This document shows positions 1,319 to 32,968 of a stretch of DNA of 32,968 bases, piece after piece (positions within the stretch are counted from its first letter, which is position 1; every line of letters starts with the position of its first letter). Made by a program: the position numbers and the translations under genes. Below the pieces are notes generated by a model. The model was not told where the DNA came from, searched no databases, and saw only the letters and a program-made list of their open reading frames with translations. Source of the stretch: Macrostomum lignano (Eukaryota); assembly GCA_002269645.1 (NCBI GenBank), contig NIVC01000331.1:1-32968 (forward strand). Reading direction: 5' to 3'.

Positions 1319-3588
1319 ACTCATTTTCATCTGACAATTAATCAGCCGACTCATTCTCATCTGACACTTTATCCAACTGACTCATTCTGCTCTGATATTT
1401 TATCCAACTGACTCATTTTCATCTGACATTTTATCCAACTGACTCATTGTCATCTGACACTTTATCCAACCGACTCATTTTCATCTGACACTTTATCCAA
1501 CTGACTCATTGTCATCTGACACTTTATCCAACTGACTCATTTTCATCTGACATTTTATCCAACTGACTCATTGTCATCTGACACTTTATCCAACCGACTC
1601 ATTTTCATCTGACACTTTATCCAACTGACTCATTCTGCTCTGATACTTTATCCAACTGACTCATTTTCATCTGACATTTTATCCAACTGACTCATTGTCA
1701 TCTGACACTTTATCCAACTGACTCATTGTCATCTGACACTTTATCCAACTGACTCATTGTCATCTGACACTTTATCCAACTGACTCATCCTCATCTGACA
1801 CTTTATCCAACTGACTCATTCTGATCTGACACTAAATCCAACTGACTCATTCTGATCTGACACTTTATCCAACTGACTCATTGTCATCTGACACTTTATC
1901 CAACTGACTCATTCTGATCTGACACTTTATCCAACTGACTCATTGTCATCTGACACTTTATCCAACTGACTCATTGTCATCTGACGCTTTATCCAACTGA
2001 CTCATTCTGCTCTGATATTTTATCCTAACTGACTCATGCTCATCTGACGCTTTATCCAACTGACTCATTCTGCTCTGATATTTTATCCTAACTGACTCAT
2101 GCTCATCTGACACTTTATCCAACTGACTCATTGTCATCTGACACTTTATCCAACTGACTCATTCTGATCTGACACTTTATCCAACTGACTCATGCTCATC
2201 TGACGCTTTATCCAACTGACTCATTCTGCTCTGATATTTTATCCTAACTGACTCATGCTCATCTGACGCTTTATCCAACTGACTCATTCTGCTCTGACAT
2301 TTTATCCTAACTGACTCATGCTCATCTGACACTTTATCCAACTGACTCATTGTCATCTGACACTTTATCCAACTGACTCATTCTGATCTGACACTAAATC
2401 CAACTGACTCATTCTGATCTGACACTTTATCCAACTGACTCATTCTGATCTGACACTTTATCCAACTGACTCATTCTGATCTGACACTAAATCCAACTGA
2501 CTCATTCTGATCTGACACTTTATCCAACTGACTCATTTTCATCTGACATTTTATCCAACTGACTCATTGTCATCTGACACTTTATCCAACCGACTCATTT
2601 TCATCTGACACTTTATCCAACTGACTCATTCTGCTCTGATATTTTATCCAACTGACTCATTTTCATCTGACATTTTATCCAACTGACTCATTGTCATCTG
2701 ACACTTTATCCAACTGACTCATTGTCATCTGACACTTTATCCAACTGACTCATTCTGCTCTGATATTTTATCCAACTGACTCATTTTCATCTGACATTTT
2801 ATCCAACTGACTCATTGTCATCTGACACTTTATCCAACTGACTCATTGTCATCTGACACTTTATCCAACTGACTCATTGTCATCTGACACTTTATCCAAC
2901 TGACTCATTGTCATCTGACACTTTATCCAACTGACTCATTGTCATCTGACGCTTTATCCAACTGACTCATTGTCATCTGACACTTTATCCAACTGACTCA
3001 TTCTGATCTGACACTTTATCCAACTGACTCATTGTCATCTGACACTTTATCCAACTGACTCATTGTCATCTGACGCTTTATCCAACTGACTCATTCTGCT
3101 CTGACACTTTATCCAACTGACTCATTCTGATCTGACACTTTATCCAACTGACTCATTTTCATCTGACACTAAATCCAACTGACTCATTCTGATCTGACAC
3201 TTTATCCAACTGACTCATTCTGATCTGACACTTTATCCAACTGACTCATTGTCATCTGACACTTTATCCAACTGACTCATTCTGATCTGACACTTTATCC
3301 AACTGACTCATTCTGATCTGACACTTTATCCAACTGACTCATTCTGATCTGACACTTTATCCAACTGACTCATTCTGATCTGACACTAAATCCAACTGAC
3401 TCATTCTGATCTGACACTTTATCCAACTGACTCATTGTCATCTGACACTTTATCCAACTGACTCATTGTCATCTGACACTTTATCCAACTGACTCATTTT
3501 CATCTGACATTTTATCCAACTGACTCATTCTGATCTGACACTTTATCCAACTGACTCATTGTCATCTGACACTTTATCCAACTGACTC
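1319..3588. repeat. 31-bp minisatellite CCAACTGACTCATTGTCATCTGACACTTTAT, roughly 70 copies, intronic
   Basis: Direct reading; variants TTCTGA/TTTTCA/TTCTGC and a block of 32-bp units around 2020-2330; ends about 13 bp from the donor at 3602. Confidence 0.97.
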
Positions 3589-3602
3589 CTTCTCAGTCTC
3601 AC

Positions 3603-4801: not shown

Positions 4802-5528
<727 letters not shown>

Positions 5529-5670
5529 TTCGCATACAAACTACACAAGTGCAGCAATTGGGGTCTTGGGGGAAAGAGTTTGCAGTCCAGATTCTCGTAG
5601 CAGATGTCCTTGGCTTAGTCCCCCAGTCCGCATGGCAACAGAGTTGCGCAGATAGCTGCTCATAAATCAC

Positions 5671-5751: not shown

Positions 5752-6160
5752 TGTCTGCTGTTAGCTCAAGCTATCTGTTGCACTTTCCCTCCCAGCCAAA
5801 AAAACGTGACGCGACAAAAATGCCTCTTACAAAAACTCTGCACCCAAAAAATGAACGTGGAATGCTGCGCAAGTGGACTTTTGTGAACAATAATAAACAA
5901 TAGGAATTGCTTAAGTTCTTTTGTTTACAGTAGGCTACTGGCTAATACGAGTACAGTATTTGCAGACTTGTATTTTTTTATTTAAATTTTTTAACTCTCG
6001 CATAACGATCTCGCATGAATGGTTTTGTGTCAATAGTTTTTCGAAGCGGATTTTTCTTGGCGGAGTTTGTCTATGGCAAAACCTCGTTGGACACTATGTA
6101 TTTTCCTGCGTTGCCGGTCAGTTCAGGTCAAATCAGCATGGGGCTGATCAAATCACGTAG

Positions 6161-7755
6161 AGATCAGACCCTCTCTGATTGATATGGGGATCAGATCCCC
6201 TGATTGATGTAGGGATCAGATCCCCTGATTGATGTAGGGATCAGACCCTCTCTGATTGATATGGGGATCAGATCCCCTGATTGATGTAGGGATCAGATCC
6301 CCTGATTGATGTAGGGATCAGACCCTCTCTGATTGATATAGGGATCAGATCCCCTGATTGATGTAGGGATCAGACCCTCTCTGATTGATGTAGGGATCAG
6401 ACCCTCTCTGATTGATATAGGGATCAGACCCTCTCTGATTGATATAGGGATCAGATCCCCTGATTGATGTAGGGATCAGACCCTCTCTGATTGATGTAGG
6501 GATAAGATCCTCTCTGATTGATGTAGGGATCAGACCCTCTCTGATTGATATAGGGATCAGATCCCCTGATTGATGTAGGGATCAGACCCTCTCTGATTGA
6601 TGTAGGGATAAGATCCTCTCTGATTGATGTAGGGATCAGACCCTCTCTGATTGATGCAGGGATCAGACCCTCTCTGATTGATGTAGGGATCAGACCCTCC
6701 CTGATTGGTGTAGGGATCAGACCCTCTCTGATTGATGTAGGGATCAGACCCTCCCTGATTGGTGTAGGGATCAGACCCTCTCTGATTGATATAGGGATCA
6801 GATCCCCTGATTGATGTAGGGATCAGACCCTCTCTGATTGATATAGGGATCAGATCCCCTGATTGATGTAGGGATCAGACCCTCTCTGATTGATATAGGG
6901 ATCAGATCCCCTGATTGATGTAGGGATCAGACCCTCTCTGATTGATGTAGGGATCAGACCCTCTCTGATTGATATAGGGATCAGACCCTCTCTGATTGAT
7001 ATAGGGATCAGATCCCCTGATTGATGTAGGGATCAGACCCTCTCTGATTGATGTAGGGATAAGATCCTCTCTGATTGATGTAGGGATCAGACCCTCTCTG
7101 ATTGATATAGGGATCAGATCCCCTGATTGATGTAGGGATCAGACCCTCTCTGATTGATGTAGGGATAAGATCCTCTCTGATTGATGTAGGGATCAGACCC
7201 TCTCTGATTGATGCAGGGATCAGACCCTCTCTGATTGATGTAGGGATCAGACCCTCCCTGATTGGTGTAGGGATCAGACCCTCTCTGATTGATGTAGGGA
7301 TCAGACCCTCCCTGATTGGTGTAGGGATCAGACCCTCTCTGATTGATGTAGGGATCAGACCCTCTCTGATTGATGCAGGGATCAGACCCTCTCTGATTGA
7401 TGTAGGGATCAGACCCTCCCTGATTGGTGTAGGGATCAGACCCTCTCTGATTGATGTAGGGATCAGACCCTCTCTGATTGATATAGGGATCAGACCACTT
7501 CTGATTGATGTAGGGATCAGACCACTTCTGATTGATGTAGGGATCAGATCCCCTGATTGATGTAGGGATCAGACCTCTCTGATTGATATAGGGATCAGAC
7601 CACTTCTGATTGATGTAGGGATCAGACCACTTCTGATTGATGTAGGGATCAGACCACTTCTGATTGATGTAGGGATCAGATCCCCTGATTGATGTAGGGA
7701 TCAGACCTCTCTGATTGATGTAGGGATCAGACCCTCCCTGATTGATATAGGGATC
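6161..7755. repeat. 27-bp minisatellite GTAGGGATCAGACCCTCTCTGATTGAT (25-bp variant ...AGATCCCCTGAT...), about 60 copies, intronic
   Basis: Direct reading; contains a 557-bp higher-order duplication. Confidence 0.97.
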
Positions 7756-7787
7756 ATGTAGGAATCTCCAACATTGAGAGAACGCAC

Positions 7788-8097: not shown

Positions 8098-8827
8098 GCA
8101 AGAGGTGCAGATCTATGCAGTTCGTTTGTTTACAGCACAGACTGCCGCTGTTGCCTGTCCTTGGAGCAGGCTGAGCCCATTAATTTAGGGCCTTGTCTTA
8201 ACTTGAGACAAATTTAATTCTCCATCGCCGAAACGCCTAATTTGAACAAATTCGCAGCCGAGGCTCGACTTGACTTGCAAAACACGCCGGCTGCACACGC
8301 GAACTGTACTTTTCCCTGTTCTACACTGACTACACTAATCTGTGGGAAATCCGGACTGTCAGTTGGGGAGCCGCATTAATCAAGTTACCATTGAGCATGC
8401 GTGAGCGATTTGACAGCGAGGCGATGTCGCGCAGATGCTGGATGGGGCAATAAATCAACGATGCAAATGATTTAAAAATTCCGTCAAAAACCTCTCGGAG
8501 AATGCTAGCATAAAAAGAGAATCGTGCCCGTGGACTCAGGAGGCTGCTGATTCACTGAAAAGTAATGTGATGAGAGCTGGCAAGTCTCCCCTGCCGTCAT
8601 TAGCAAGTTCGGCTCGAGATCTACCCTATAATGAAGCAAAAAAAATTGATAGAGTTTTTTTGCTGTTTTTAATTAATTCTGAAAATTGATAAACACTTGG
8701 GAGGGCAAATTATTGAAAACAAGAAGTCAATTTAAAATATTTGGCTGGTTTGGGCCGGGCGTGACAAAGAAGGAAATTTTTAAATTGCCTTTCATTTTTG
8801 CCTGTGGAAAAACAGTCACGTGACTAA

Positions 8828-9050
<223 letters not shown>

Positions 9051-9311
9051 TCTCAAGTTCTAGATAACAAAACATGTGCTTAACACTCTGCTAGAAGTAG
9101 TCTTGAACAAAATCTAAAGTTTCCTACCTTCAAGTACGTTGAAATACGTATATCTCAATATTAGAACACACAGTCAACAAACTAGATGCCGAAGAGCAGA
9201 AATTATCAATAATGCAACAAAAGTATTTAAAGAAATGTTACAAACAATGAAAAATAGCACAACATTCTACCGTTGTGTTTGTTGTCAATATTTAGAATAA
9301 GAACTGCAATA

Positions 9312-9610
9312 TTGTCAGACCCTACAATAACTACAACTTCAGAGATACAACTGTCAGACCCTACAACTGTCAGTCAACTGTCAGACTCTACAACTGTCAG
9401 ACCCTACAACTGTCAGACCCTACAACTGTCAGACCCTACAACTCTTAGACCCTACAACTGTCAGACCCTAAAACTGTCAGACCCTAAAACTGTCAGACCC
9501 TACAACTGTCAGACCCTACAACTGTCAGACCCTAAAACTGTCAGACCCTACAACTGTCAGACCCTACAACTGTCAGACCCTACAACTGTCAGAGCCCTCC
9601 ACACTGTCAG
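9312..9610. repeat. 16-bp minisatellite CTGTCAGACCCTACAA directly downstream of the antistasin-like gene
   Basis: Direct reading; abuts the TGA at 9607-9609. Confidence 0.95.
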
Positions 9611-9801
9611 GCTCCGCCACTGTTCAGCTGGAAGCGCGAAGTCTCTCTAACCGTGGCGCCGTCCTCTTGCACGCAGTCGCAGGCGCAGGCCATCTCCGCG
9701 GCCTCGGCAGCCTGGCTGACGCGCCGCCTGCATCGACAGTCGCAGGCCTCCCTGGCCGAGCCGCGGCATTGACACAGCGGGCAGCCGTCCCCGGACTCCA
9801 T
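9607..9801 (-). CDS. In-frame continuation of the antistasin-like protein beyond the internal TGA (MESGDGCPLCQC...CDCRC...CACDC)
   Basis: Starts immediately after TGA 9802-9804 in the same frame and supplies the GCxxCxC half of the interrupted domain. Whether it is translated is unknown (readthrough, nonsense allele or sequence error). Confidence 0.55.
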   Translation of the reverse strand: MESGDGCPLCQCRGSAREACDCRCRRRVSQAAEAAEMACACDCVQEDGATVRETSRFQLNSGGA

Positions 9802-10257
9802 TCAGTAGCCGAATTCCCGACACGACAGGCCGCAACCGCGGAGCCACTGGCAGCGAGGAGACGCAGGCGCGGTAGTTGTTGCAGCTGCCGCGGTTGTCGC
9901 AGTCGGCTGAGCAGTCAGCAGCCGGTCGGCCAAAGCGTTGAGTACGCTGCTCAGGTCGCTGGCTAGTTGACTCAACTTGGACACATCAGCGTCAGCGACT
10001 GCGCCTGGCAGCGCACTGTTGGAGTCTTTGTCTCTAACACTGCTGCTGCTGCTGCTGCTGCTGCTGCACATGCATTCGGGACAGCTGGCAGCCGCAGCGC
10101 CCGCCTGCACCAGCACGGCCGGGCGAACAGAACCGCAGGCAGTTTGGCAGGACGCCAAATTCCATCGGCACGCTTTGGCAGACGGCGGCGTGGACTGGCT
10201 GCCTACTACGAGTAGTTGCGGAAGCAGCAGCAGCACCACCACCGTTGGGAAATTCAT
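9802..10257 (-). CDS. Secreted Cys-rich protein with antistasin-like domains (putative protease inhibitor)
   Basis: Signal peptide MNFPTVVVLLLLPQLLVVGS; domain 1 C-x6-C-x3-C...C-x2-C-x-C (CRWNLASCQTAC...CPECMC); domain 2 CQWLRGCGLSCREFGY*MESGDGCPLCQC fits the antistasin pattern CxxxCxxG[FY]xxDxxGCxxCxC. Confidence 0.7.
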   Translation of the reverse strand: MNFPTVVVLLLLPQLLVVGSQSTPPSAKACRWNLASCQTACGSVRPAVLVQAGAAAASCPECMCSSSSSSSSSVRDKDSNSALPGAVADADVSKLSQLASDLSSVLNALADRLLTAQPTATTAAAATTTAPASPRCQWLRGCGLSCREFGY

Positions 10258-11112
10258 TTTCTAATTTATAATTTGTCCTGATATGTGTAGAAAATATTTA
10301 CGCAAGTAACTGTATTGTTTCTGCACAGACAAGTATTTTATTGATTTTTTAATGAGAGCCGCCTCTCAGCCATCTATGTACATTGAGGGACGAAGTTTAA
10401 TGTACATAAGCTGAGCCACTTTTTTCACTCCCTGTCTTCTCTGCCCTCTACGCTCGTATCTCTCTTGGTGGCGGAATCCTGACCAATCGATGCGAAGCTA
10501 CAATAAAGAATGTACACTGAAATAAAAGCTGAAATGTACATAGCCAAATAATCAATATCTATGACCTTTGGTCAAACAAATTATCCTGTAAAATATTGCA
10601 TGTAGTGAACGATTTTTAAGTGAGTGTTTTCATCTTCTCGTAAGCAGAGAAAAATTCAGTCTAGCTGACGAATGCTCAGGGTGTATATTTGAATGTTTTT
10701 ATAAGTACATTCAGAAATACTCAAGGTTGCTATGGACAAATATCCGAATTCGAATAGCTCGTATTAAAACCACAGTTTCAAATTCTCAACAATTACTTGG
10801 GTTTAATGCTATAAACACTGAATAGAAGGTTTAGTAGTTAAGGTGTTCTGATACTTGTGTAGGAAATTACTATTGAATGCTATTAAATATTTGTAAGCTG
10901 TCACCTGAATGGCTATGATTGTGACACCTCAGTATTCAAGAATAGCTGTAGGTAGAATATTATGAAGAAATAACTTTTTGAAGAAGTCGGATTTTTATCA
11001 CATTTCTAATAAATTACAGATGATAAATAAGAAAATATAAGAAGACTCAAATCCAGCAGCTCATAGAGCAGTTCACAGTCAGTCTCTCGTGCCTAGCAAC
11101 TGGCCTCCTCAC

Positions 11113-11237
11113 TCAGCCCATGACCAGGGAGAGGACGGCCATGACTCCGGCTGCGATGCCCGAGCACCCGGACAGGAAGCCCTTGGTGCTGTTGTAGGGC
11201 GCCCTGCTGGCGAAGATCTGGACGAGGACAAGGATGC
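11113..11237 (-). CDS. Exon 2 of a small four-TM (claudin/PMP22-like) protein: end of TM3, TM4, stop
   Basis: Strong pyrimidine tract then CAG|GC at 11238/11237, phase 1 matching exon 1; encodes ILVLVQIFASRAPYNSTKGFLSGCSGIAAGVMAVLSLVMG*. This frame is absent from the ORF track. Confidence 0.85.
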
Positions 11238-11592
11238 CTGCATTGCGGAGGGGGAGGGAGAGAAGTGCGAGCTGGACTCGAATCTCTGCAACACCAAAAA
11301 TCCGACTTAAGTAGATTTAGCTTGTCAGAGTTGACTTCTCAGATCACCTCTGGGTAGGATTTCCAATTACTCATGCGATGCTTTAGTGGAGAAGCAGCGA
11401 GTATCGCAGTGTTTACAACAGCTATTAATCCCTTTTTAACCTATCTGCTTTTAATTAAAAATCCGCCAGCTAATTAAATAGCTAAATATACATTCAGCAA
11501 CAGCCCACCACAAGCATGCAAAAGTACAACTACTGGTCGTAGCATGGGGGGCAATGGTCAGGATCTTTCATCGGTGGGATTTAGCATAGCAC

Positions 11593-11757
11593 CTTTAGCA
11601 CCAGGGGCTTTAGCACCAGGGGCTTTAGCACCAGGGGCTTTAGCACAAGGGGCGTTAGCATCAGGGGGCGTTAGCACCAGGGGCGTTAGCACCAGGGGGC
11701 TTTAGAACCAAGGGGCTTTAGCACCAGTGGCGACAGCACCTGAGGCGCCAGCACCAT
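11593..11757. repeat. 15-bp minisatellite GGGGCTTTAGCACCA, degenerating, intronic
   Basis: Direct reading; 1-bp indels break any frame. Confidence 0.9.
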
Positions 11758-11921
11758 GATCATCCTGAGTAGTATATATTCTAATCATCGGTTGGATAAA
11801 CTCTTGGAGACGCTGCATTGATCACCGATGCCTTGTCGGTAAGCTCACTTTGGCTGTCAATTCAATAGCAGTAATGTACATGGATGTACATGCAAGTAAA
11901 GGTACAAATCAATCATCTTAC

Positions 11922-12162
11922 CAGCCAGAATAGCGGCCACGGCGAACACAATTAGAACAATCTTATTGTTGGCCTCGTCCACAAAGATGTAGGCCGTGAT
12001 GAGCACGATGGCGCCAGTGTAGAAAAAGAAGGCCAGCACAGCCGTGGCCTGGCCGCCGGCGCTGCCCCAGCCAAACGAAGTGAACAGCAGCAGGCAGAAC
12101 CCGATGACTGTGAAGAAGAAGGCCAACTTCAACCACTTACTCTGGCTGTCGAGGTCTCCCAT
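11922..12162 (-). CDS. Exon 1 of a 121-aa four-TM membrane protein, claudin/PMP22-like
   Basis: ORF 11857..12162 with three hydrophobic segments; donor GCT G|GTAAGA at 11922/11921 in phase 1. Family assignment rests on topology and the W after TM1 only. Confidence 0.85.
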
Positions 12163-14870: not shown

Positions 14871-15111
14871 ATGTCCAACATTCCCCCGCCACTCAACCTG
14901 CGACCCAAAAAGGGCATTCTAAAGTCTCGCAGTCACCATCATCGTCTGTCGCAACAGCTGCGACCAGAGCATCAGCAGCAGCTGCAGATGCGGTTGAAAC
15001 AGCAGCAACAGCAGGATGGCCTGACACCAGACGAGAGCACAGCTGGCTCTGCCTCCCACAAGCTGTTCCAATGGGACGAGATGAATATTCTAGCCACTTA
15101 CCACCCTGCAG
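14871..15111 (+). CDS. PPP1R2: Protein phosphatase inhibitor-2, exon 1
   Basis: KGILK (SILK) motif and WDEMNILATYHPA hallmark; donor GCA G|GTAGAC at 15111/15112, phase 1. Confidence 0.95.
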
Positions 15112-15153
15112 GTAGACTTTGAGCTTAACTGACAATAACTGACTGTTGAGTGA

Positions 15154-17090
15154 GTGATCCCAGATCCTCCCAGTCCCTCAGGGTGACTCAGTGATCCCAG
15201 ATCCTCTCAGTCCCTCAGGGTGACTCAGTGATCCCAGATCCTCTCAGTCCCTCAGGGTGACTCAGTAATCTCAGATCCTCTCAGTCCCTCAGAGTGACTC
15301 AGTGATCCCAGATCCTCTCAGTCCCTCAGGGTGACTCAGTGATCCCAGATCCTCCCAGTCCCTCAGGGTGACTCAGTGATCCCAGATCCTCCCAGTCCCT
15401 CAGGGTGACTCAGTGATCCCAGATCCTCCCAGTCCCTCAGGGTGACTCAGTGATCCCAGATCCTCCCAGTCCCTCAGGGTGACTCAGTGATCCCAGATCC
15501 TCCCAGTCCCTCAGGGTGACTCAGTGATCCCAGATCCTCTCAGTCCCTCAGGGTGACTCAGTGATCCCAGATCCTCTCAGTCCCTCAGGGTGACTCAGTA
15601 ATCTCAGATCCTCTCAGTCCCTCAGAGTGACTCAGTGATCCCAGATCCTCTCAGTCCCTCAGGGTGACTCAGTGATCCCAGATCCTCCCAGTCCCTCAGG
15701 GTGACTCAGTGATCCCAGATCCTCTCAGTCCCTCAGGGTGACTCAGTGATCCCAGATCCTCCCAGTCCCTCAGGGTGACTCAGTGATCCCAGATCCTCCC
15801 AGTCCCTCAGGGTGACTCAGTAATCTCAGATCCTCTCAGTCCCTCAGAGTGACTCAGTGATCCCAGATCCTCCCAGTCCCTCAGGGTGACTCAGTGATCC
15901 CAGATCCTGCCAGTCCCTCAGGGTGACTCAGTAATCTCAGATCCTCTCAGTCCCTCAGAGTGACTCAGTGATCCCAGATCCTCCCAGTCCCTCAGGGTGA
16001 CTCAGTGATCCCAGATCCTGCCAGTCCCTCAGGGTGACTCAGTAATCCCAGATCCTCTCAGTCCCTCAGAGTGACTCAGTGATCCCAGATCCTCCCAGTC
16101 CCTCAGAGTGACGCAGTGATCCCAGATCCTCCCAGTCCCTCAGGGTGACTCAGTGATCCCAGATCCTCCCAGTCCCTCAGAGTGACGCAGTGATCCCAGA
16201 TCCTCCCAGTCCCTCAAGGTGACTCAGTGATCCCAGGTCGTCCCAGTCCCTCAGAGTGACTCAGTGATCCCAGATCCTCCCAGTCCCTCAGGGTGACTCA
16301 GTGATCCCAGATCCTCCCAGTCCCTCAGGGTGACTCAGTGATCCCAGATCCTCCCAGTCCCTCAGGGTGACTCAGTGATCCCAGATCCTCTCAGTCCCTC
16401 AGGGTGACTCAGTGATCCCAGATCCTCCCAGTCCCTCAGGGTGACTCAGTAATCTCAGATCCTCTCAGTCCCTCAGAGTGACTCAGTGATCCCAGATCCT
16501 CCCAGTCCCTCAGAGTGACGCAGTGATCCCAGATCCTCCCAGTCCCTCAAGGTGACTCAGTGATCCCAGGTCGTCCCAGTCCCTCAGGGTGACTCAGTGA
16601 TCCCAGATCCTCCCAGTCCCTCAGGGTGACTCAGTGATCCCAGATCCTCCCAGTCCTCAGGGTGACTCAGTGATCCCAGATCCTCTCAGTCCCTCAGGGT
16701 GACTCAGTGATCCCAGATCCTCTCAGTCCCTCAGGGTGACTCAGTGATCCCAGATCCTCTCAGTCCCTCAGGGTGACTCAGTAATCTCAGATCCTCTCAG
16801 TCCCTCAGAGTGACTCAGTGATCCCAGATCCTCTCAGTCCCTCAGGGTGACTCAGTGATCCCAGATCCTCCCAGTCCCTCAGGGTGACTCAGTGATCCCA
16901 GATCCTCTCAGTCCCTCAGGGTGACTCAGTGATCCCAGATCCTCCCAGTCCCTCAAGGTGACTCAGTGATCCCAGGTCGTCCCAGTCCCTCAGGGTGACT
17001 CAGTGATCCCAGATCCTCCCAGTCCCTCAGGGTGACTCAGTGATCCCAGATCCTCCCAGTCCCTCAGGGTGACTCAGTGATCCCAGATCC
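15154..17090. repeat. 37-bp minisatellite GTGATCCCAGATCCTCCCAGTCCCTCAGGGTGACTCA, about 52 copies, filling the PPP1R2 intron
   Basis: Direct reading; period 37 (15154, 15191). Confidence 0.97.
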
Positions 17091-17150
17091 CCCTTTCGCT
17101 GATTCAGTGACTCAGTGCTCCCCGTTTGGAACCTACCGCACCCCAACCAG

Positions 17151-17563
17151 GCAAGGACTACGGCCACATGAAGGTGGACGAAGCGCCGACGCCTTACGAG
17201 GCGGCCCAGCCGGTCACCGAGGAAGATGAGGACCAGGACAGTGGTGGCGGCGGGCAGCCCCGGACCCGCCGCGCCAGCTTTGGTGACGCAGTGCCGGCCG
17301 AGTTGCTGGCCTCCCGGCTGCGCGCCGAGGCCGCCGATTCTGGTGGCGCCGGCGCCAACGCGCCATTGTCGCCGGTGCACGATTTGGACGCCGACGAGAG
17401 CGAGCTGAGCGCCGAGGAGCGGGAGAGAAGGCGCCAATTTCGGTTAAAACGGAAGCAGCACTACAATGAGTTCCAGGCGGCGCTTGTTGCTAGGCAACAG
17501 AGTCAGGAGGACGAAGATGACGAGGAGAAATGCGACGAAGCGGTTGGCATGGAATCCGGGTGA
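17151..17563 (+). CDS. PPP1R2: Protein phosphatase inhibitor-2, exon 2 (about 217 aa in total)
   Basis: Acceptor AACCAG|GC at 17150/17151, phase 1, giving HPAGKDYGHMKVDEAPTPY (GSK3-site PxTP) and FRLKRKQHYNE (PP1 active-site helix). Confidence 0.95.
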
Positions 17564-29158: not shown

Positions 29159-30047
29159 TGATTTTCAGAGTGGATTATTGGCGATTCTCAGAGTGGATTA
29201 GAGGCGATTCTCAGAGCGGATTAGAGGCGATTCTCAGAGCGGATTAGGGGCGATTCTCAGAGTGGATTAGAGGCGATTCTCAGAGTGGATTAGGGGCGAT
29301 TCTCAGAGTGGATTAGAGGCGATTCTCAGAGTGGATTAGGGGCGATTCTCAGAGTGGATTAGAGGCGATTCTCAGAGTGGATTAGGTGCGATTCTCAGAG
29401 TAGATTAGAGGCGATTCTCAGAGCGGATTAGGGGCGATTCTCAGAGCGGATTAGGGGCGATTCTTTGAGCGGATTAGAGCCGATTCTCAGAGCGGATTCT
29501 GGCCGATTCTCAGAGTGGATTAGAGGCGATTCTCAGAGTGGATTATATGTGATTCTCAGAGTGGATTAGAGGCGATTCTCAGAGTGGATTAGGGGCGATT
29601 CTTAGAGTGGATTAGAGACGATTCTTAGAGTGGGTTAGGGGCGATTCTCAGAGTGGATTAGAGGCGATTCTCAGAGCGGATTATATGCGATTCTCAGAGC
29701 GGATTAGAGGCGATTCTCAGAGTGGATTAGAGGCGATTCTCAGAGTGGATTAGAGGCGATTCTCAGAGTGGATTATATGTAATTCTGGGAGTGGATTATA
29801 TGTGATTCTCAGAGCGGATTAGAGGCGATTCTCAGAGTGGATTATATGTAATTCTGGGAGTGGATTATATGTGATTCTCAGAGCGGATTAGAGGCGATTC
29901 TCAGAGCGGATTATATGCGATTCTCAGAGCGGATTAGAGAAGATTCTCAGAGCGGATTATATGCGATTCTCAGAGCGGATTAGAGAAGATTCTCAGAGCG
30001 GATTATATACGATTCTCAGAGCGGATTAGAGACGATTCTCAGAGTGG
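29159..30047. repeat. 23-bp minisatellite GGATTAGAGGCGATTCTCAGAG(T/C), about 38 copies, intronic
   Basis: Direct reading; ends about 20 bp from the donor at 30068. Confidence 0.96.
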
Positions 30048-30068: not shown

Positions 30069-30568
30069 CTGCAGCACAAACGCGTACTCAGCCCGGTCGA
30101 ACTGAGGCACGCAGTCGTTCACATCCAGCACAGTGATTTTCACCGTGGTGCTGGCCGAAAATGACGTCGAACCGTGATCCGTGGCCATCACGGTGAGGGT
30201 GTACGAGTCCTTCAGCTCCCTGTCCGGGCTGGTGCGAACGACCAGCTGTCCGGAGTTGGTGTCCAAAGCAAACATTCTGTCTGGATCGCCGTCCAGTATT
30301 TTATAGGTGAGCCGGCCATTCTCACCAGAGTCCGCATCGTTTGCCAGCACTTTCACGCTCAGCGGGGTGCCAGGCGGTTCGTTCTCTTTCACTGAGACGC
30401 GAAATCCGTCCGCAGGAAATTCTGGCGCGTTATCGTTCTCGTCGATCACCTTCACCGTGACAACGGCTGTGGCGCTTAGCGGAGGCTCGCCAAGGTCGTA
30501 GGCTTTCACTGTCAGGTAGTACACCTGCTGGCGCTCGTAGTCTAAGGCTGACTTCACTGTCAGGGTGC
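30069..30568 (-). CDS. FAT1: FAT-type cadherin exon: about 1.5 canonical cadherin repeats
   Basis: LDYE, AYDLG, DENDNAPEF, DADSGENG, PDRE, DVNDCVPQF motifs; acceptor ATCCAG|GC (phase 1), donor CAG|GTAAGA (phase 0). The gene continues upstream beyond the window. Confidence 0.96.
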
Positions 30569-30602
30569 CTGGATTGGGTAAGGGGTGGGGGCGGCCGGTA
30601 CT

Positions 30603-32761
30603 GGATCACTGTGAATTAGTCATTCGGTCATTGGACACTATATGCATTGGTCACTGTGAATTAGTCATTCGGTCATTGGACACTATATGCATTGATCACT
30701 GTGAATTAGTCATTCGGTCATTGGACACTATATGCATTGGTCACTGTGAATTAGTCATTCGGTCATTGGACACTATATGCATTGGTCACTGTGAATTAGT
30801 CATTCGGTCATTGGACACTATATGCATCGGTCACTGTGAATTAGTCATTCTGTCACTGGACACTATATGCATTGATCACTGTGAATTAGTCATTCGGTCA
30901 TTGGACACTATATGCATTGGTCACTGTGAATTAGTCATTCTGTCACTGGACACTATATGCATTGATCACTGTGAATTAGTCATTCTGTCACTGGACACTA
31001 TATGCATTGGTCACTGTGAATTAGTCATTCGGTCATTGGACACTATATGCATTGGTCACTGTGAATCAGTCATTCTGTCACTGGACACTATATGCATTGG
31101 TCACTGTAAATCAGTCATTCTGTCACTGGACACTATATGCATCGGTCACTGTGAATTAGTCATTCTGTCACTGGACACTATATGCATTGATCACTGTGAA
31201 TTAGTCATTCGGTCATTGGACACTATATGCATTGGTCACTGTGAATTAGTCATTCGGTCATTGGACACTATATGCATTGGTCACTGTGAATTAGTCATTC
31301 GGTCATTGGACACTATATGCATTGATCACTGTGAATTAGTCATTCGGTCATTGGACACTATATGCATTGGTCACTGTGAATTAGTCATTCGGTCATTGGA
31401 CACTATATGCATTGGTCACTGTGAATTAGTCATTCGGTCATTGGACACTATATGCATTGGTCACTGTGAATCAGTCATTCGGTCATTGGACACTATATGC
31501 ATTGGTCACTGTGAATTAGTCATTCGGTCATTGGACACTATATGCATTGGTCACTGTGAATTAGTCATTCGGTCATTGGACACTATATGCATTGGTCACT
31601 GTGAATTAGTCATTCTGTCACTGGACACTATATGCATTGGTCACTGTGAATTAGTCATTCGGTCATTGGACACTATATGCATTGATCACTGTGAATTAGT
31701 CATTCGGTCATTGGACACTATATGCATTGGTCACTGTGAATTAGTCATTCGGTCATTGGACACTATATGCATTGGTCACTGTGAATTAGTCATTCGGTCA
31801 TTGGACACTATATGCATTGGTCACTGTGAATCAGTCATTCGGTCATTGGACACTATATGCATTGGTCACTGTGAATTAGTCATTCGGTCATTGGACACTA
31901 TATGCATTGGTCACTGTGAATTAGTCATTCGGTCATTGGACACTATATGCATTGGTCACTGTGAATTAGTCATTCGGTCATTGGACACTATATGCATTGG
32001 TCACTGTGAATTAGTCATTCGGTCATTGGACACTATATGCATTGATCACTGTGAATTAGTCATTCGGTCATTGGACACTATATGCATTGATCACTGTGAA
32101 TTAGTCATTCGGTCATTGGACACTATATGCATTGGTCACTGTGAATTAGTCATTCGGTCATTGGACACTATATGCATTGATCACTGTGAATTAGTCATTC
32201 GGTCATTGGACACTATATGCATTGGTCACTGTGAATTAGTCATTCGGTCATTGGACACTATATGCATTGGTCACTGTGAATTAGTCATTCGGTCATTGGA
32301 CACTATATGCATTGATCACTGTGAATTAGTCATTCGGTCATTGGACACTATATGCATTGGTCACTGTGAATTAGTCATTCGGTCATTGGACACTATATGC
32401 ATTGATCACTGTGAATTAGTCATTCGGTCATTGGACACTATATGCATTGGTCACTGTGAATTAGTCATTCGGTCATTGGACACTATATGCATTGGTCACT
32501 GTGAATTAGTCATTCGGTCATTGGACACTATATGCATTGGTCACTGTGAATTAGTCATTCTGTCACTGGACACTATATGCATTGGTCACTGTGAATTAGT
32601 CATTCGGTCATTGGACACTATATGCATTGGTCACTGTGAATTAGTCATTCGGTCATTGGACACTATATGCATTGGTCACTGTGAATTAGTCATTCGGTCA
32701 TTGGACACTATATGCATTGGTCACTGTGAATTAGTCATCGGTCATTGGACACTATATGCAT
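30603..32761. repeat. 45-bp minisatellite CATTGGTCACTGTGAATTAGTCATTCGGTCATTGGACACTATATG, about 48 highly homogeneous copies, intronic
   Basis: Direct reading; produces the 740-codon antisense ORF 30565..32787. Confidence 0.97.
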
Positions 32762-32968
32762 CACTTCAGCTACTAAAGCAGTCATAAGTCATCCCAAATC
32801 GTGACTGACAGCTTTTCTACTATGACATCGGGACACAAGCCGTCGGGTCACGCAGAAGTTGATTGTGGGGGGGGGCACGAATGAACGCGGTACGCGCGCA
32901 CTTTTAATAGCTAGCTCAGGCTACGAGATGGCAATGCTGGGAGAGAGAGAGATGGGGCTGCTACGGCT

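What the first reader, a model, noticed from the sequence alone, without database searches (positions are those of the whole stretch)
9607..10257. In-frame TGA in the middle of an otherwise intact antistasin-like domain
ORFs 9802..10257 and 9607..9801 are in the same frame, separated only by TGA (TAC TGA ATG). Read through, they give a 216-aa secreted protein whose second domain CQWLRGCGLSCREFGY-X-MESGDGCPLCQC has all six Cys at antistasin spacing, followed by a further Cys-rich segment. Stopping at the TGA would leave three unpaired Cys in a secreted protein. Options: programmed readthrough, selenocysteine, A-to-I editing of UGA to a Trp codon, a recent nonsense allele or paralogue (e.g. CGA>TGA), or a sequencing error. 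Against Sec: the position is not a conserved Cys and I found no convincing SECIS. Against classic readthrough: the +4 base is A, not C.
Basis: partly seen in the sequence, partly recalled or inferred. Interest (0 to 1): 0.7.

Follow-up and report, generated by a model that had tools for sequence, protein, structure and literature searches.

The report
Young nonsense allele in duplicated flatworm gene
The in-frame TGA is real, but it is an ordinary single-base C-to-T change (Arg CGA to stop TGA) in one of three near-identical copies of a small secreted cysteine-rich protein gene in the recently polyploid flatworm Macrostomum lignano, so no recoding is needed to explain it.

Summary
On the minus strand, 151 codons (10257..9805) are followed by TGA (9804..9802) and by 64 more in-frame codons that end at the gene's natural TGA (9609..9607). 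The stop splits a six-Cys module that scores borderline as Antistasin (PF02822: 21.1 bits against a 21.2 cut-off, measured on the intact copy).

The window is the whole contig NIVC01000331.1 of the Macrostomum lignano Mlig_3_7 assembly. Four contigs of that assembly carry this locus.
- Two contigs, the window and NIVC01004290, are identical over the 781 nt compared and read TAC TGA ATG.
- The other two, NIVC01004298 and NIVC01004065, read TAC CGA ATG and encode intact proteins of 217 and 216 aa. The NIVC01004065 copy is annotated as PAA48756.1.

The three haplotypes differ by about 1-2%, which fits the published S/L1/L2 subgenomes of this neopolyploid. The stop is therefore a recent CGA>TGA transition at a CpG in one redundant copy.

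Nothing supports recoding. No SECIS was found, the homologous residue is Arg rather than Cys, the context is UGA-A, the downstream RNA folds no better than shuffled sequence, and TGA is the normal terminator of this gene and of its neighbour.

The gene has no detectable relative outside M. lignano. This is an ordinary finding of low interest.

The parts
9805..10257 (-). 5' part of the CDS. It has 151 codons: a signal-peptide-like N-terminus, a first six-Cys module (10170..10066), a poly-Ser run, a predicted helix, a Thr/Ala-rich linker, and the first three Cys of the antistasin-like module.
   Evidence: It is 97% identical to residues 1-151 of PAA48756.1.
9802..9804 (-). Premature TGA (codon 152). 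The homologous codon is CGA (Arg) in NIVC01004298 and NIVC01004065. The changed base is window position 9804: T on the minus strand, with C in the intact copies. That C is followed by G, so it sits in a CpG.
9607..9801 (-). 3' part of the CDS, now downstream of the stop. It has 64 codons plus the natural TGA terminator (9609..9607). It holds the last three Cys of the antistasin-like module and a further CxCxC...CxCxC segment.
   Evidence: Its translation is identical to that of the intact NIVC01004298 copy.
9766..9852 (-). Antistasin-like six-Cys module (codons 136-164), interrupted by the stop.
   Evidence: PF02822, E=4.4e-4, 21.1 bits against a 21.2 cut-off, measured on the intact homologue's module.
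9331..9610 (-). 16-nt minisatellite (about 18 copies; unit GGTCTGACAGTTGTAG on the gene strand). It starts at the natural stop codon and fills the start of the 3' UTR.
   Evidence: It is present in all four copies.
11113..12162 (-). Upstream same-strand neighbour: a two-exon gene for a 121-aa transmembrane protein (P0002). The protein is identical in all four contigs. A UniProt model (P0003) fuses it to this gene through the AG acceptor just before the ATG at 10257.

Best explanation
The window is one of several near-identical copies (homeologous or allelic) of an intronless, lineage-restricted Macrostomum lignano gene. The gene encodes a secreted, cysteine-rich protein of about 216 aa. In the haplotype represented by this contig and by NIVC01004290, a single C>T transition at a CpG turned Arg codon 152 (CGA) into TGA. 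Translation most likely stops there. The product would be a 151-aa protein with a broken disulfide module, so this copy is probably null. The intact copies on the other subgenomes supply the function. The change is very recent: the copy carries no other disabling lesion, and its downstream codons are still identical in translation to an intact copy. This is the first step of loss of a duplicated gene, or a segregating nonsense variant, in a neopolyploid. It is not a recoding signal. What is shown: the sense codon in the other copies, the presence of the T in two contigs, and the absence of recoding signals. What is inferred: termination at the TGA, loss of function, and relaxed selection through redundancy.
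For: (1) One search gives a single hit, PAA48756.1 from M. lignano: 216 aa, 97% identical, and exactly 151+1+64 residues long. It has R where the window has the stop. (2) One search shows that the window is contig NIVC01000331.1 (32968 bp) of GCA_002269645.1, and that three more contigs carry the locus. (3) In some searches, the codon is CGA in NIVC01004065 and NIVC01004298 and TGA in the window and NIVC01004290, with identical flanking codons (TAC_ATG). (4) In some searches, the three haplotypes at the gene differ by 0.8-1.9%. This matches the published SNP divergence among the S/L1/L2 subgenomes of the DV1 line (1.4-2.4%, PMC10733133) and the 180 Mb of blocks at least 95% identical in this assembly (PMC5730564). 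(5) In one search, the changes specific to the window haplotype within the CDS are only a 3-bp indel, one synonymous change and the stop. One search gives 2 synonymous and 0 non-synonymous differences against NIVC01004298. (6) In one search, the two TGA contigs have different flanking haplotypes (window 22162-14663 equals NIVC01004065, while NIVC01004290 follows NIVC01004298 there). The T therefore appears in two separately built consensus sequences. (7) TGA is a normal terminator here: it ends this gene in the annotated intact copy and ends the upstream TM gene. (8) There is no SECIS or other Rfam element at E<=10 in 8500-10500. The 125 nt from the stop onwards fold no better than shuffled sequence (z=+0.36).
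Against: No reads, RNA-seq or proteomics could be examined, so termination and loss of function are inferred. A UniProt model built on the older ML2 assembly (P0003) shows the window's protein haplotype (STPPSAKA, nine Ser, N, R, D) but with Arg at codon 152. Either the T is polymorphic within this haplotype, or one of the two assemblies has a mixed consensus at this base. The downstream 64 codons carry no extra damage. That is what a very young mutation predicts, but it is also what continued translation would predict. With about 1 change expected in that stretch, the two cannot be told apart.
Confidence: 0.85

Rival explanations
1. Assembly or consensus artefact: the genome has CGA in every copy, and the T arose during Canu consensus building or polishing of this highly redundant, repeat-rich assembly.
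For: P0003, from an independent assembly of the same PacBio data, shows a window-like protein haplotype with Arg. The assembly is known to be partly chimeric: 36% of its length lies in S/L-chimeric scaffolds (PMC10733133). The four contigs here are mosaics of each other.
Against: The same T occurs in two contigs that differ in their flanks. From general knowledge, PacBio consensus errors are mainly indels rather than C>T substitutions, and polishing can only introduce a T that is present in the reads. P0003 could itself be a mixed consensus of the two haplotypes, which differ at only four positions in the CDS.
Confidence: 0.07
2. Functional recoding: the UGA is decoded to give the full 216-aa protein. 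The route would be near-cognate or programmed readthrough, selenocysteine insertion, or A-to-I editing to UGG.
For: The downstream frame is intact and completes a six-Cys module. No further lesions are present in this copy.
Against: The stop is not conserved: two of the three haplotypes have CGA. The homologous residue is Arg, not Cys or Sec. No SECIS was found. The context is UGA-A rather than UGA-C or CUAG (the context rule is from general knowledge). There is no unusual downstream structure. The sequences flanking the stop are the same in the sense-codon copies, so no dedicated signal has evolved. The intactness of the downstream frame is explained by the youth of the mutation.
Confidence: 0.03
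3. The truncated 151-aa secreted product (first Cys module, helix and linker) is itself functional. The TGA copy would then be a retained, sub- or neo-functionalised paralogue rather than a null.
For: The first 151 codons include a complete signal peptide, a complete first six-Cys module, and the only confidently predicted element, a helix at residues 92-115. The allele is represented in two of the four contigs.
Against: Truncation leaves three orphan Cys from the split module, which is usually harmful in a secreted protein (inference). No protein of this length is recorded anywhere. The divergence is too small to show any selection on the truncated form.
Confidence: 0.04

Closest known systems
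PAA48756.1, hypothetical protein BOX15_Mlig017015g1, Macrostomum lignano (contig NIVC01004065.1); UniRef100_A0A267DHX2
   Same: It sits at the same locus in a homeologous or allelic contig. It is 97% identical in protein and about 98% in DNA including the flanks. It has the same start, the same natural TGA terminator, the same 16-nt minisatellite in the 3' UTR, and the same neighbours (the TM-protein gene and the IPP-2 gene).
   Different: It has CGA (Arg) at codon 152 instead of TGA. It also carries four amino-acid replacements and two 3-bp indels.
Antistasin family (Pfam PF02822; the leech antistasin/hirustasin type of six-Cys serine-protease-inhibitor module)
   Same: It shares the six-Cys spacing C-x5-C-x3-C-...-GC-x2-C-x-C. 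The Pfam profile is matched end to end (1-26 of 26) with E=4.4e-4.
   Different: The score is 0.1 bit below Pfam's gathering threshold, and the hit appears only when the module is scanned on its own. The first Cys module and the C-terminal Cys segment do not match. No homologue links this protein to characterised antistasins. The structure model is too poor to compare.
Nonsense alleles or early pseudogenisation of redundant copies after whole-genome duplication (gene fractionation)
   Same: A single disabling transition sits in one of three copies that are about 98% identical, in a documented neopolyploid. The neighbouring genes are intact in all copies.
   Different: There is only one lesion so far, and whether it is fixed is unknown. 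The M. lignano subgenome paper read here does not contain the words 'pseudogen' or 'gene loss'.
Conserved stop-codon readthrough genes (as described in Drosophila and Anopheles) and selenoprotein genes
   Same: An in-frame UGA is followed by an open, protein-like frame.
   Different: In those systems the stop is conserved across homologues. Readthrough genes usually have a UGA-C context or a downstream structure, and selenoprotein genes have a SECIS element with Cys/Sec at the aligned position. None of these is true here.

Membership tests
Nonsense allele / nascent pseudogene of a duplicated gene | Homologous copies have a sense codon that is one substitution away from the stop | tested here: met
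   The codon is CGA in NIVC01004298 and NIVC01004065 and TGA in the window and NIVC01004290. The flanking codons are identical.
Nonsense allele / nascent pseudogene of a duplicated gene | Functional redundancy: intact copies exist in the same genome | tested here: met
   Intact ORFs of 216 and 217 aa lie on two other contigs. Polyploidy with three subgenomes is published.
Nonsense allele / nascent pseudogene of a duplicated gene | The variant is real in the DNA, and the allele gives no full-length product | not testable with these tools
   No reads, RNA-seq or proteomics were available. Indirect support comes from two contigs with different flanks sharing the T.
Antistasin family (PF02822) | Match to the Pfam profile at or above the gathering score | tested here: inconclusive
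   The isolated module scores 21.1 bits against a 21.2 cut-off, with full profile coverage. The whole protein gives no hit.
Antistasin family (PF02822) | Six Cys with the canonical spacing | tested here: met
   The module is CQWLRGCGLSCREFGY[R/*]MESGDGCPLCQC.
Antistasin family (PF02822) | Serine-protease inhibitory activity and the antistasin fold | not testable with these tools
   The AF2 single-sequence model has mean pLDDT 47.7, and below 50 across the module. No fold search was attempted.
Selenoprotein gene | SECIS element in the 3' UTR | tested here: not met
   Rfam at E<=10 over 8500-10500, both strands, finds no SECIS family. The 3' UTR starts with a 16-nt minisatellite.
Selenoprotein gene | The UGA aligns with Cys or Sec in homologues | tested here: not met
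   It aligns with Arg.
Programmed stop-codon readthrough | The stop codon is conserved among homologues, with coding constraint downstream | tested here: not met
   The stop is absent from two of the three haplotypes.
Programmed stop-codon readthrough | A stimulatory context (UGA-C / CUAG) or a stable downstream RNA structure | tested here: not met
   The context is UGA-AUG. The fold z-score is +0.36 against shuffles.
A-to-I editing of UGA to UGG | RNA reads show G at the edited A, and a dsRNA structure lies around the site | not testable with these tools
   No RNA-seq was available. The local fold is unremarkable. Editing would give Trp, whereas the other copies encode Arg.

The most novel reading that the evidence does not exclude
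The TGA haplotype is maintained rather than decaying. Either low-level readthrough of UGA-A still yields some full-length protein, or the 151-aa truncated secreted form has its own role. Under this reading, an orphan, Macrostomum-specific antistasin-like secreted protein would be diversifying among the three subgenomes of a neopolyploid.
Probability: 0.04. Interest if true: 0.4.

Novelty: already known. Interest (0 to 1): 0.08.

Why it matters
It matters little beyond genome annotation. It is a clean example of a single-step CGA>TGA knockout in one of three roughly 98%-identical copies, in a genome where early evolution after polyploidy is being actively studied. It also shows that in-frame stops in this assembly should first be compared with the homeologous contigs before recoding is invoked. 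The gene itself may interest Macrostomum researchers. It is an orphan secreted Cys-rich protein with a borderline antistasin-like module and no detectable relative among about 5.8 billion protein clusters. That point is independent of the stop codon.

Tried and rejected
- **Exact look-ups.** The 151-aa product, the 64-aa ORF, the NIVC01004298 product and a window-haplotype sequence with Arg at codon 152 are not in the collection. P0003 has no contig on record. There is therefore no independent DNA or transcript evidence for either allele.
- **Homology searches.** The 151-aa piece searched against 5.8 billion protein clusters, phmmer of the intact homologue against 1.84 billion representatives, and a PDB sequence search (chance hits only at E about 0.4) found no relatives outside M. 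lignano. Orthologue-based dN/dS and polarisation by an outgroup were therefore impossible.
- **Pfam.** The two halves and the whole homologue give nothing. Only the isolated module gives the borderline Antistasin hit.
- **Structure.** The AF2 single-sequence model of PAA48756.1 has mean pLDDT 47.7. That is too poor for a fold search, so none was run.
- **Literature.** Searches for the gene id and for Macrostomum with antistasin returned nothing relevant.
- **Intron skipping the TGA.** Rejected. The intact copies read the same bases as coding sequence, the annotated CDS is a contiguous 651 nt, and no GT...AG pair of plausible length brackets the codon.
- **Alternative genetic code.** Rejected. 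TGA terminates this gene and its neighbour.
- **dN/dS between copies.** The ratio is 0.27-0.34 on only 4-5 non-synonymous and 5 synonymous differences. It is suggestive of constraint on the gene family but far too few sites to test the segment downstream of the stop.

Full report
**Observation.** On the minus strand of the window, an ATG at 10257 opens a 151-codon reading frame ending ...GAA TTC GGC TAC TGA, with the TGA at 9804..9802. The very next codon (ATG, 9801..9799) continues in the same frame for 64 codons to a second TGA at 9609..9607. The N-terminus (MNFPTVVVLLLLPQLLVVGSQS) has the look of a signal peptide; this is read from the sequence, as no predictor was run. The stop falls after the third Cys of a module CQWLRGCGLSCREFGY-*-MESGDGCPLCQC.

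**Source of the window.** A search with the 151-aa piece against about 5.8 billion protein clusters returned a single hit. [quoted passage not shown] It is 97% identical and 216 aa long, which is exactly 151+1+64, and it has Arg where the window has the stop. A look-up of the upstream neighbour (the 121-aa transmembrane protein P0002) returned four contigs of assembly GCA_002269645.1 (Mlig_3_7). One of them, NIVC01000331.1, is 32968 bp long, and its reverse complement is identical to window 1113-22162. The window is therefore that whole contig. The composition fits this origin: minisatellites are everywhere, in line with the published 15% simple and tandem repeats (PMC5730564).

**The four copies.** Alignment of the gene from all four contigs gives the following.
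- The window and NIVC01004290 are identical over the 781 nt compared and read TAC TGA ATG.
- NIVC01004298 and NIVC01004065 read TAC CGA ATG and encode uninterrupted proteins of 217 and 216 aa.
- The difference is a single C>T transition, and the C is in a CpG. CpG is moderately depleted in the window (observed/expected 0.67 against 1.02 for GpC).
- Over 5.2 kb around the gene, the TGA pair differs from the two CGA copies by 0.8% and 1.3%, and those two differ from each other by 1.9%.

These figures match the published picture of the sequenced DV1 line. It is a neopolyploid with three homeologous 'haplovariants' (S, L1, L2) that differ by about 1.4-2.4% in SNPs (PMC10733133). Its assembly holds 180 Mb of duplicated blocks at least 95% identical.

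**Age of the stop.** Within the CDS, the changes private to the TGA haplotype are a 3-bp indel in the Pro/Thr stretch after the signal peptide, one synonymous GCA/GCG difference, and the stop itself. Against NIVC01004298 there are 2 synonymous and 0 non-synonymous differences. The 64 codons after the stop translate identically to that intact copy. With a divergence of about 1%, roughly one change would be expected in those 195 nt whether or not they are still translated. Their intactness therefore says only that the mutation is young.

**Real variant or error.** A chunked comparison shows that the four contigs are mosaics.
- From window 22162 to 14663, the window is identical to NIVC01004065, and NIVC01004290 follows NIVC01004298.
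- From 14162 to 2663, the window is identical to NIVC01004290.
- The switch lies in a stretch where all four are identical. That stretch includes a 37-nt tandem array in an intron of the IPP-2 gene.

Whether this reflects true recombinants or assembler chimeras (36% of the assembly by length is reported chimeric between S and L), the T is present in two separately built consensus sequences. That argues against a random error.

One caveat remains. A UniProt model derived from the older ML2 assembly (P0003; its origin is from my own knowledge of the accession series) shows the window's protein haplotype with Arg at this codon. Either the T is polymorphic within this haplotype, or one of the assemblies mixed two haplotypes that differ at only four CDS positions. 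Only reads can settle this.

**Recoding hypotheses.**
- *Selenocysteine.* No SECIS or any credible Rfam element was found at E<=10 across 8500-10500 on either strand. The 3' UTR begins with a 16-nt minisatellite. The aligned residue in the other copies is Arg, not Cys.
- *Programmed readthrough.* The stop is not conserved among the copies. The context is UGA-A. The 125 nt from the stop onwards fold no better than shuffled sequence (z=+0.36). The surrounding sequence is the same in the sense-codon copies, so no dedicated signal exists.
- *Alternative code.* TGA terminates this very gene in the annotated intact copy, and it terminates the upstream TM gene.
- *Intron.* The annotated CDS of the intact copy is a contiguous 651 nt.
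- *A-to-I editing.* This cannot be tested without RNA reads, but nothing calls for it.

**What the gene is.**
- The whole protein has no Pfam match.
- The isolated second module matches Antistasin (PF02822) over the full profile, at 21.1 bits against a gathering score of 21.2. It is antistasin-like by Cys pattern, but membership is unproven.
- The first Cys module and the C-terminal CxCxC...CxCxC segment match nothing.
- phmmer of the intact protein against 1.84 billion representatives found only itself. The PDB search gave chance hits only.
- The single-sequence AlphaFold model is poor, with mean pLDDT 47.7. Only a helix at residues 92-115 reaches confidence.
- Between copies, dN/dS is about 0.3 on very few sites.

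It is best described as an orphan, secreted, Cys-rich protein of M. lignano of unknown function, possibly a protease-inhibitor-like module.

**Conclusion.** The most likely mechanism (confidence about 0.85) is ordinary termination at a recently acquired nonsense codon in one of three redundant copies. This gives a truncated, probably misfolded 151-aa product with an odd number of Cys, which is effectively a null allele tolerated because intact homeologues exist. The rivals are an assembly artefact (about 0.07), a functional truncated form (about 0.04) and true recoding (about 0.03). The finding is real but ordinary. No step had to be referred: the organism is a free-living flatworm, and the protein is not a known toxin or effector.

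Noticed in passing
window 22162-14663 versus 14162-2663 (L004 compared with L002, L003, L005): The four contigs carrying this locus are mosaics. The window is base-identical to NIVC01004065 on one side and to NIVC01004290 on the other. The switch lies in a stretch that is identical in all four and includes the 37-nt x 52 tandem array (15153-17090). This is either homeologous or allelic recombination, or chimeric contig assembly.
   Followed up: partly
window 9331-9610 (minus strand; array starts at the stop codon 9609..9607): The gene's natural TGA terminator lies inside the first, degenerate unit of a 16-nt minisatellite (GGTCTGACAGTTGTAG, about 18 copies). The array therefore seems to supply the stop codon and the start of the 3' UTR, and it does so in all four copies.
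   Followed up: no
L003 11922-12575 (NIVC01004298.1): This contig carries a fully intact 217-aa copy of the gene, but no gene is called there. Only the NIVC01004065 copy is annotated. Absence of annotation in this assembly therefore does not track the stop codon.
   Followed up: partly
window 10258-10262 and 11113-12162 (minus strand): An AG acceptor sits 3 nt upstream of the ATG (ttataaattag|aaaATG). A UniProt model (P0003) splices the upstream 121-aa TM-protein gene onto it. This suggests a trans-splice acceptor or polycistronic precursor of the kind reported for M. lignano.
   Followed up: no
window 1319-3595, 6157-7756, 15153-17090, 29160-30047, 30606-32761 and others: Minisatellite density is extreme: 31-nt x73, 27-nt x60, 37-nt x52, 23-nt x39 and 45-nt x48, plus long tetranucleotide runs. 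These arrays generate spurious long ORFs, for example the 740-aa ORF at 30565..32787 and the 228-aa ORF at 4969..5655.
   Followed up: no
window 19697 to at least 30557 (minus strand) and 14871-17563 (plus strand): The neighbouring genes are a large cadherin + EGF single-pass membrane protein (Cadherin 2.1e-31, EGF 5.9e-22) and a protein phosphatase inhibitor 2 gene (IPP-2, 2.9e-21). Both are called in the homeologous contigs too.
   Followed up: partly
whole window: CpG observed/expected is 0.67 while GpC is 1.02. This is a moderate CpG deficit in a flatworm genome. It bears on whether CpG>TpG hypermutability applies, but was not pursued.
   Followed up: no
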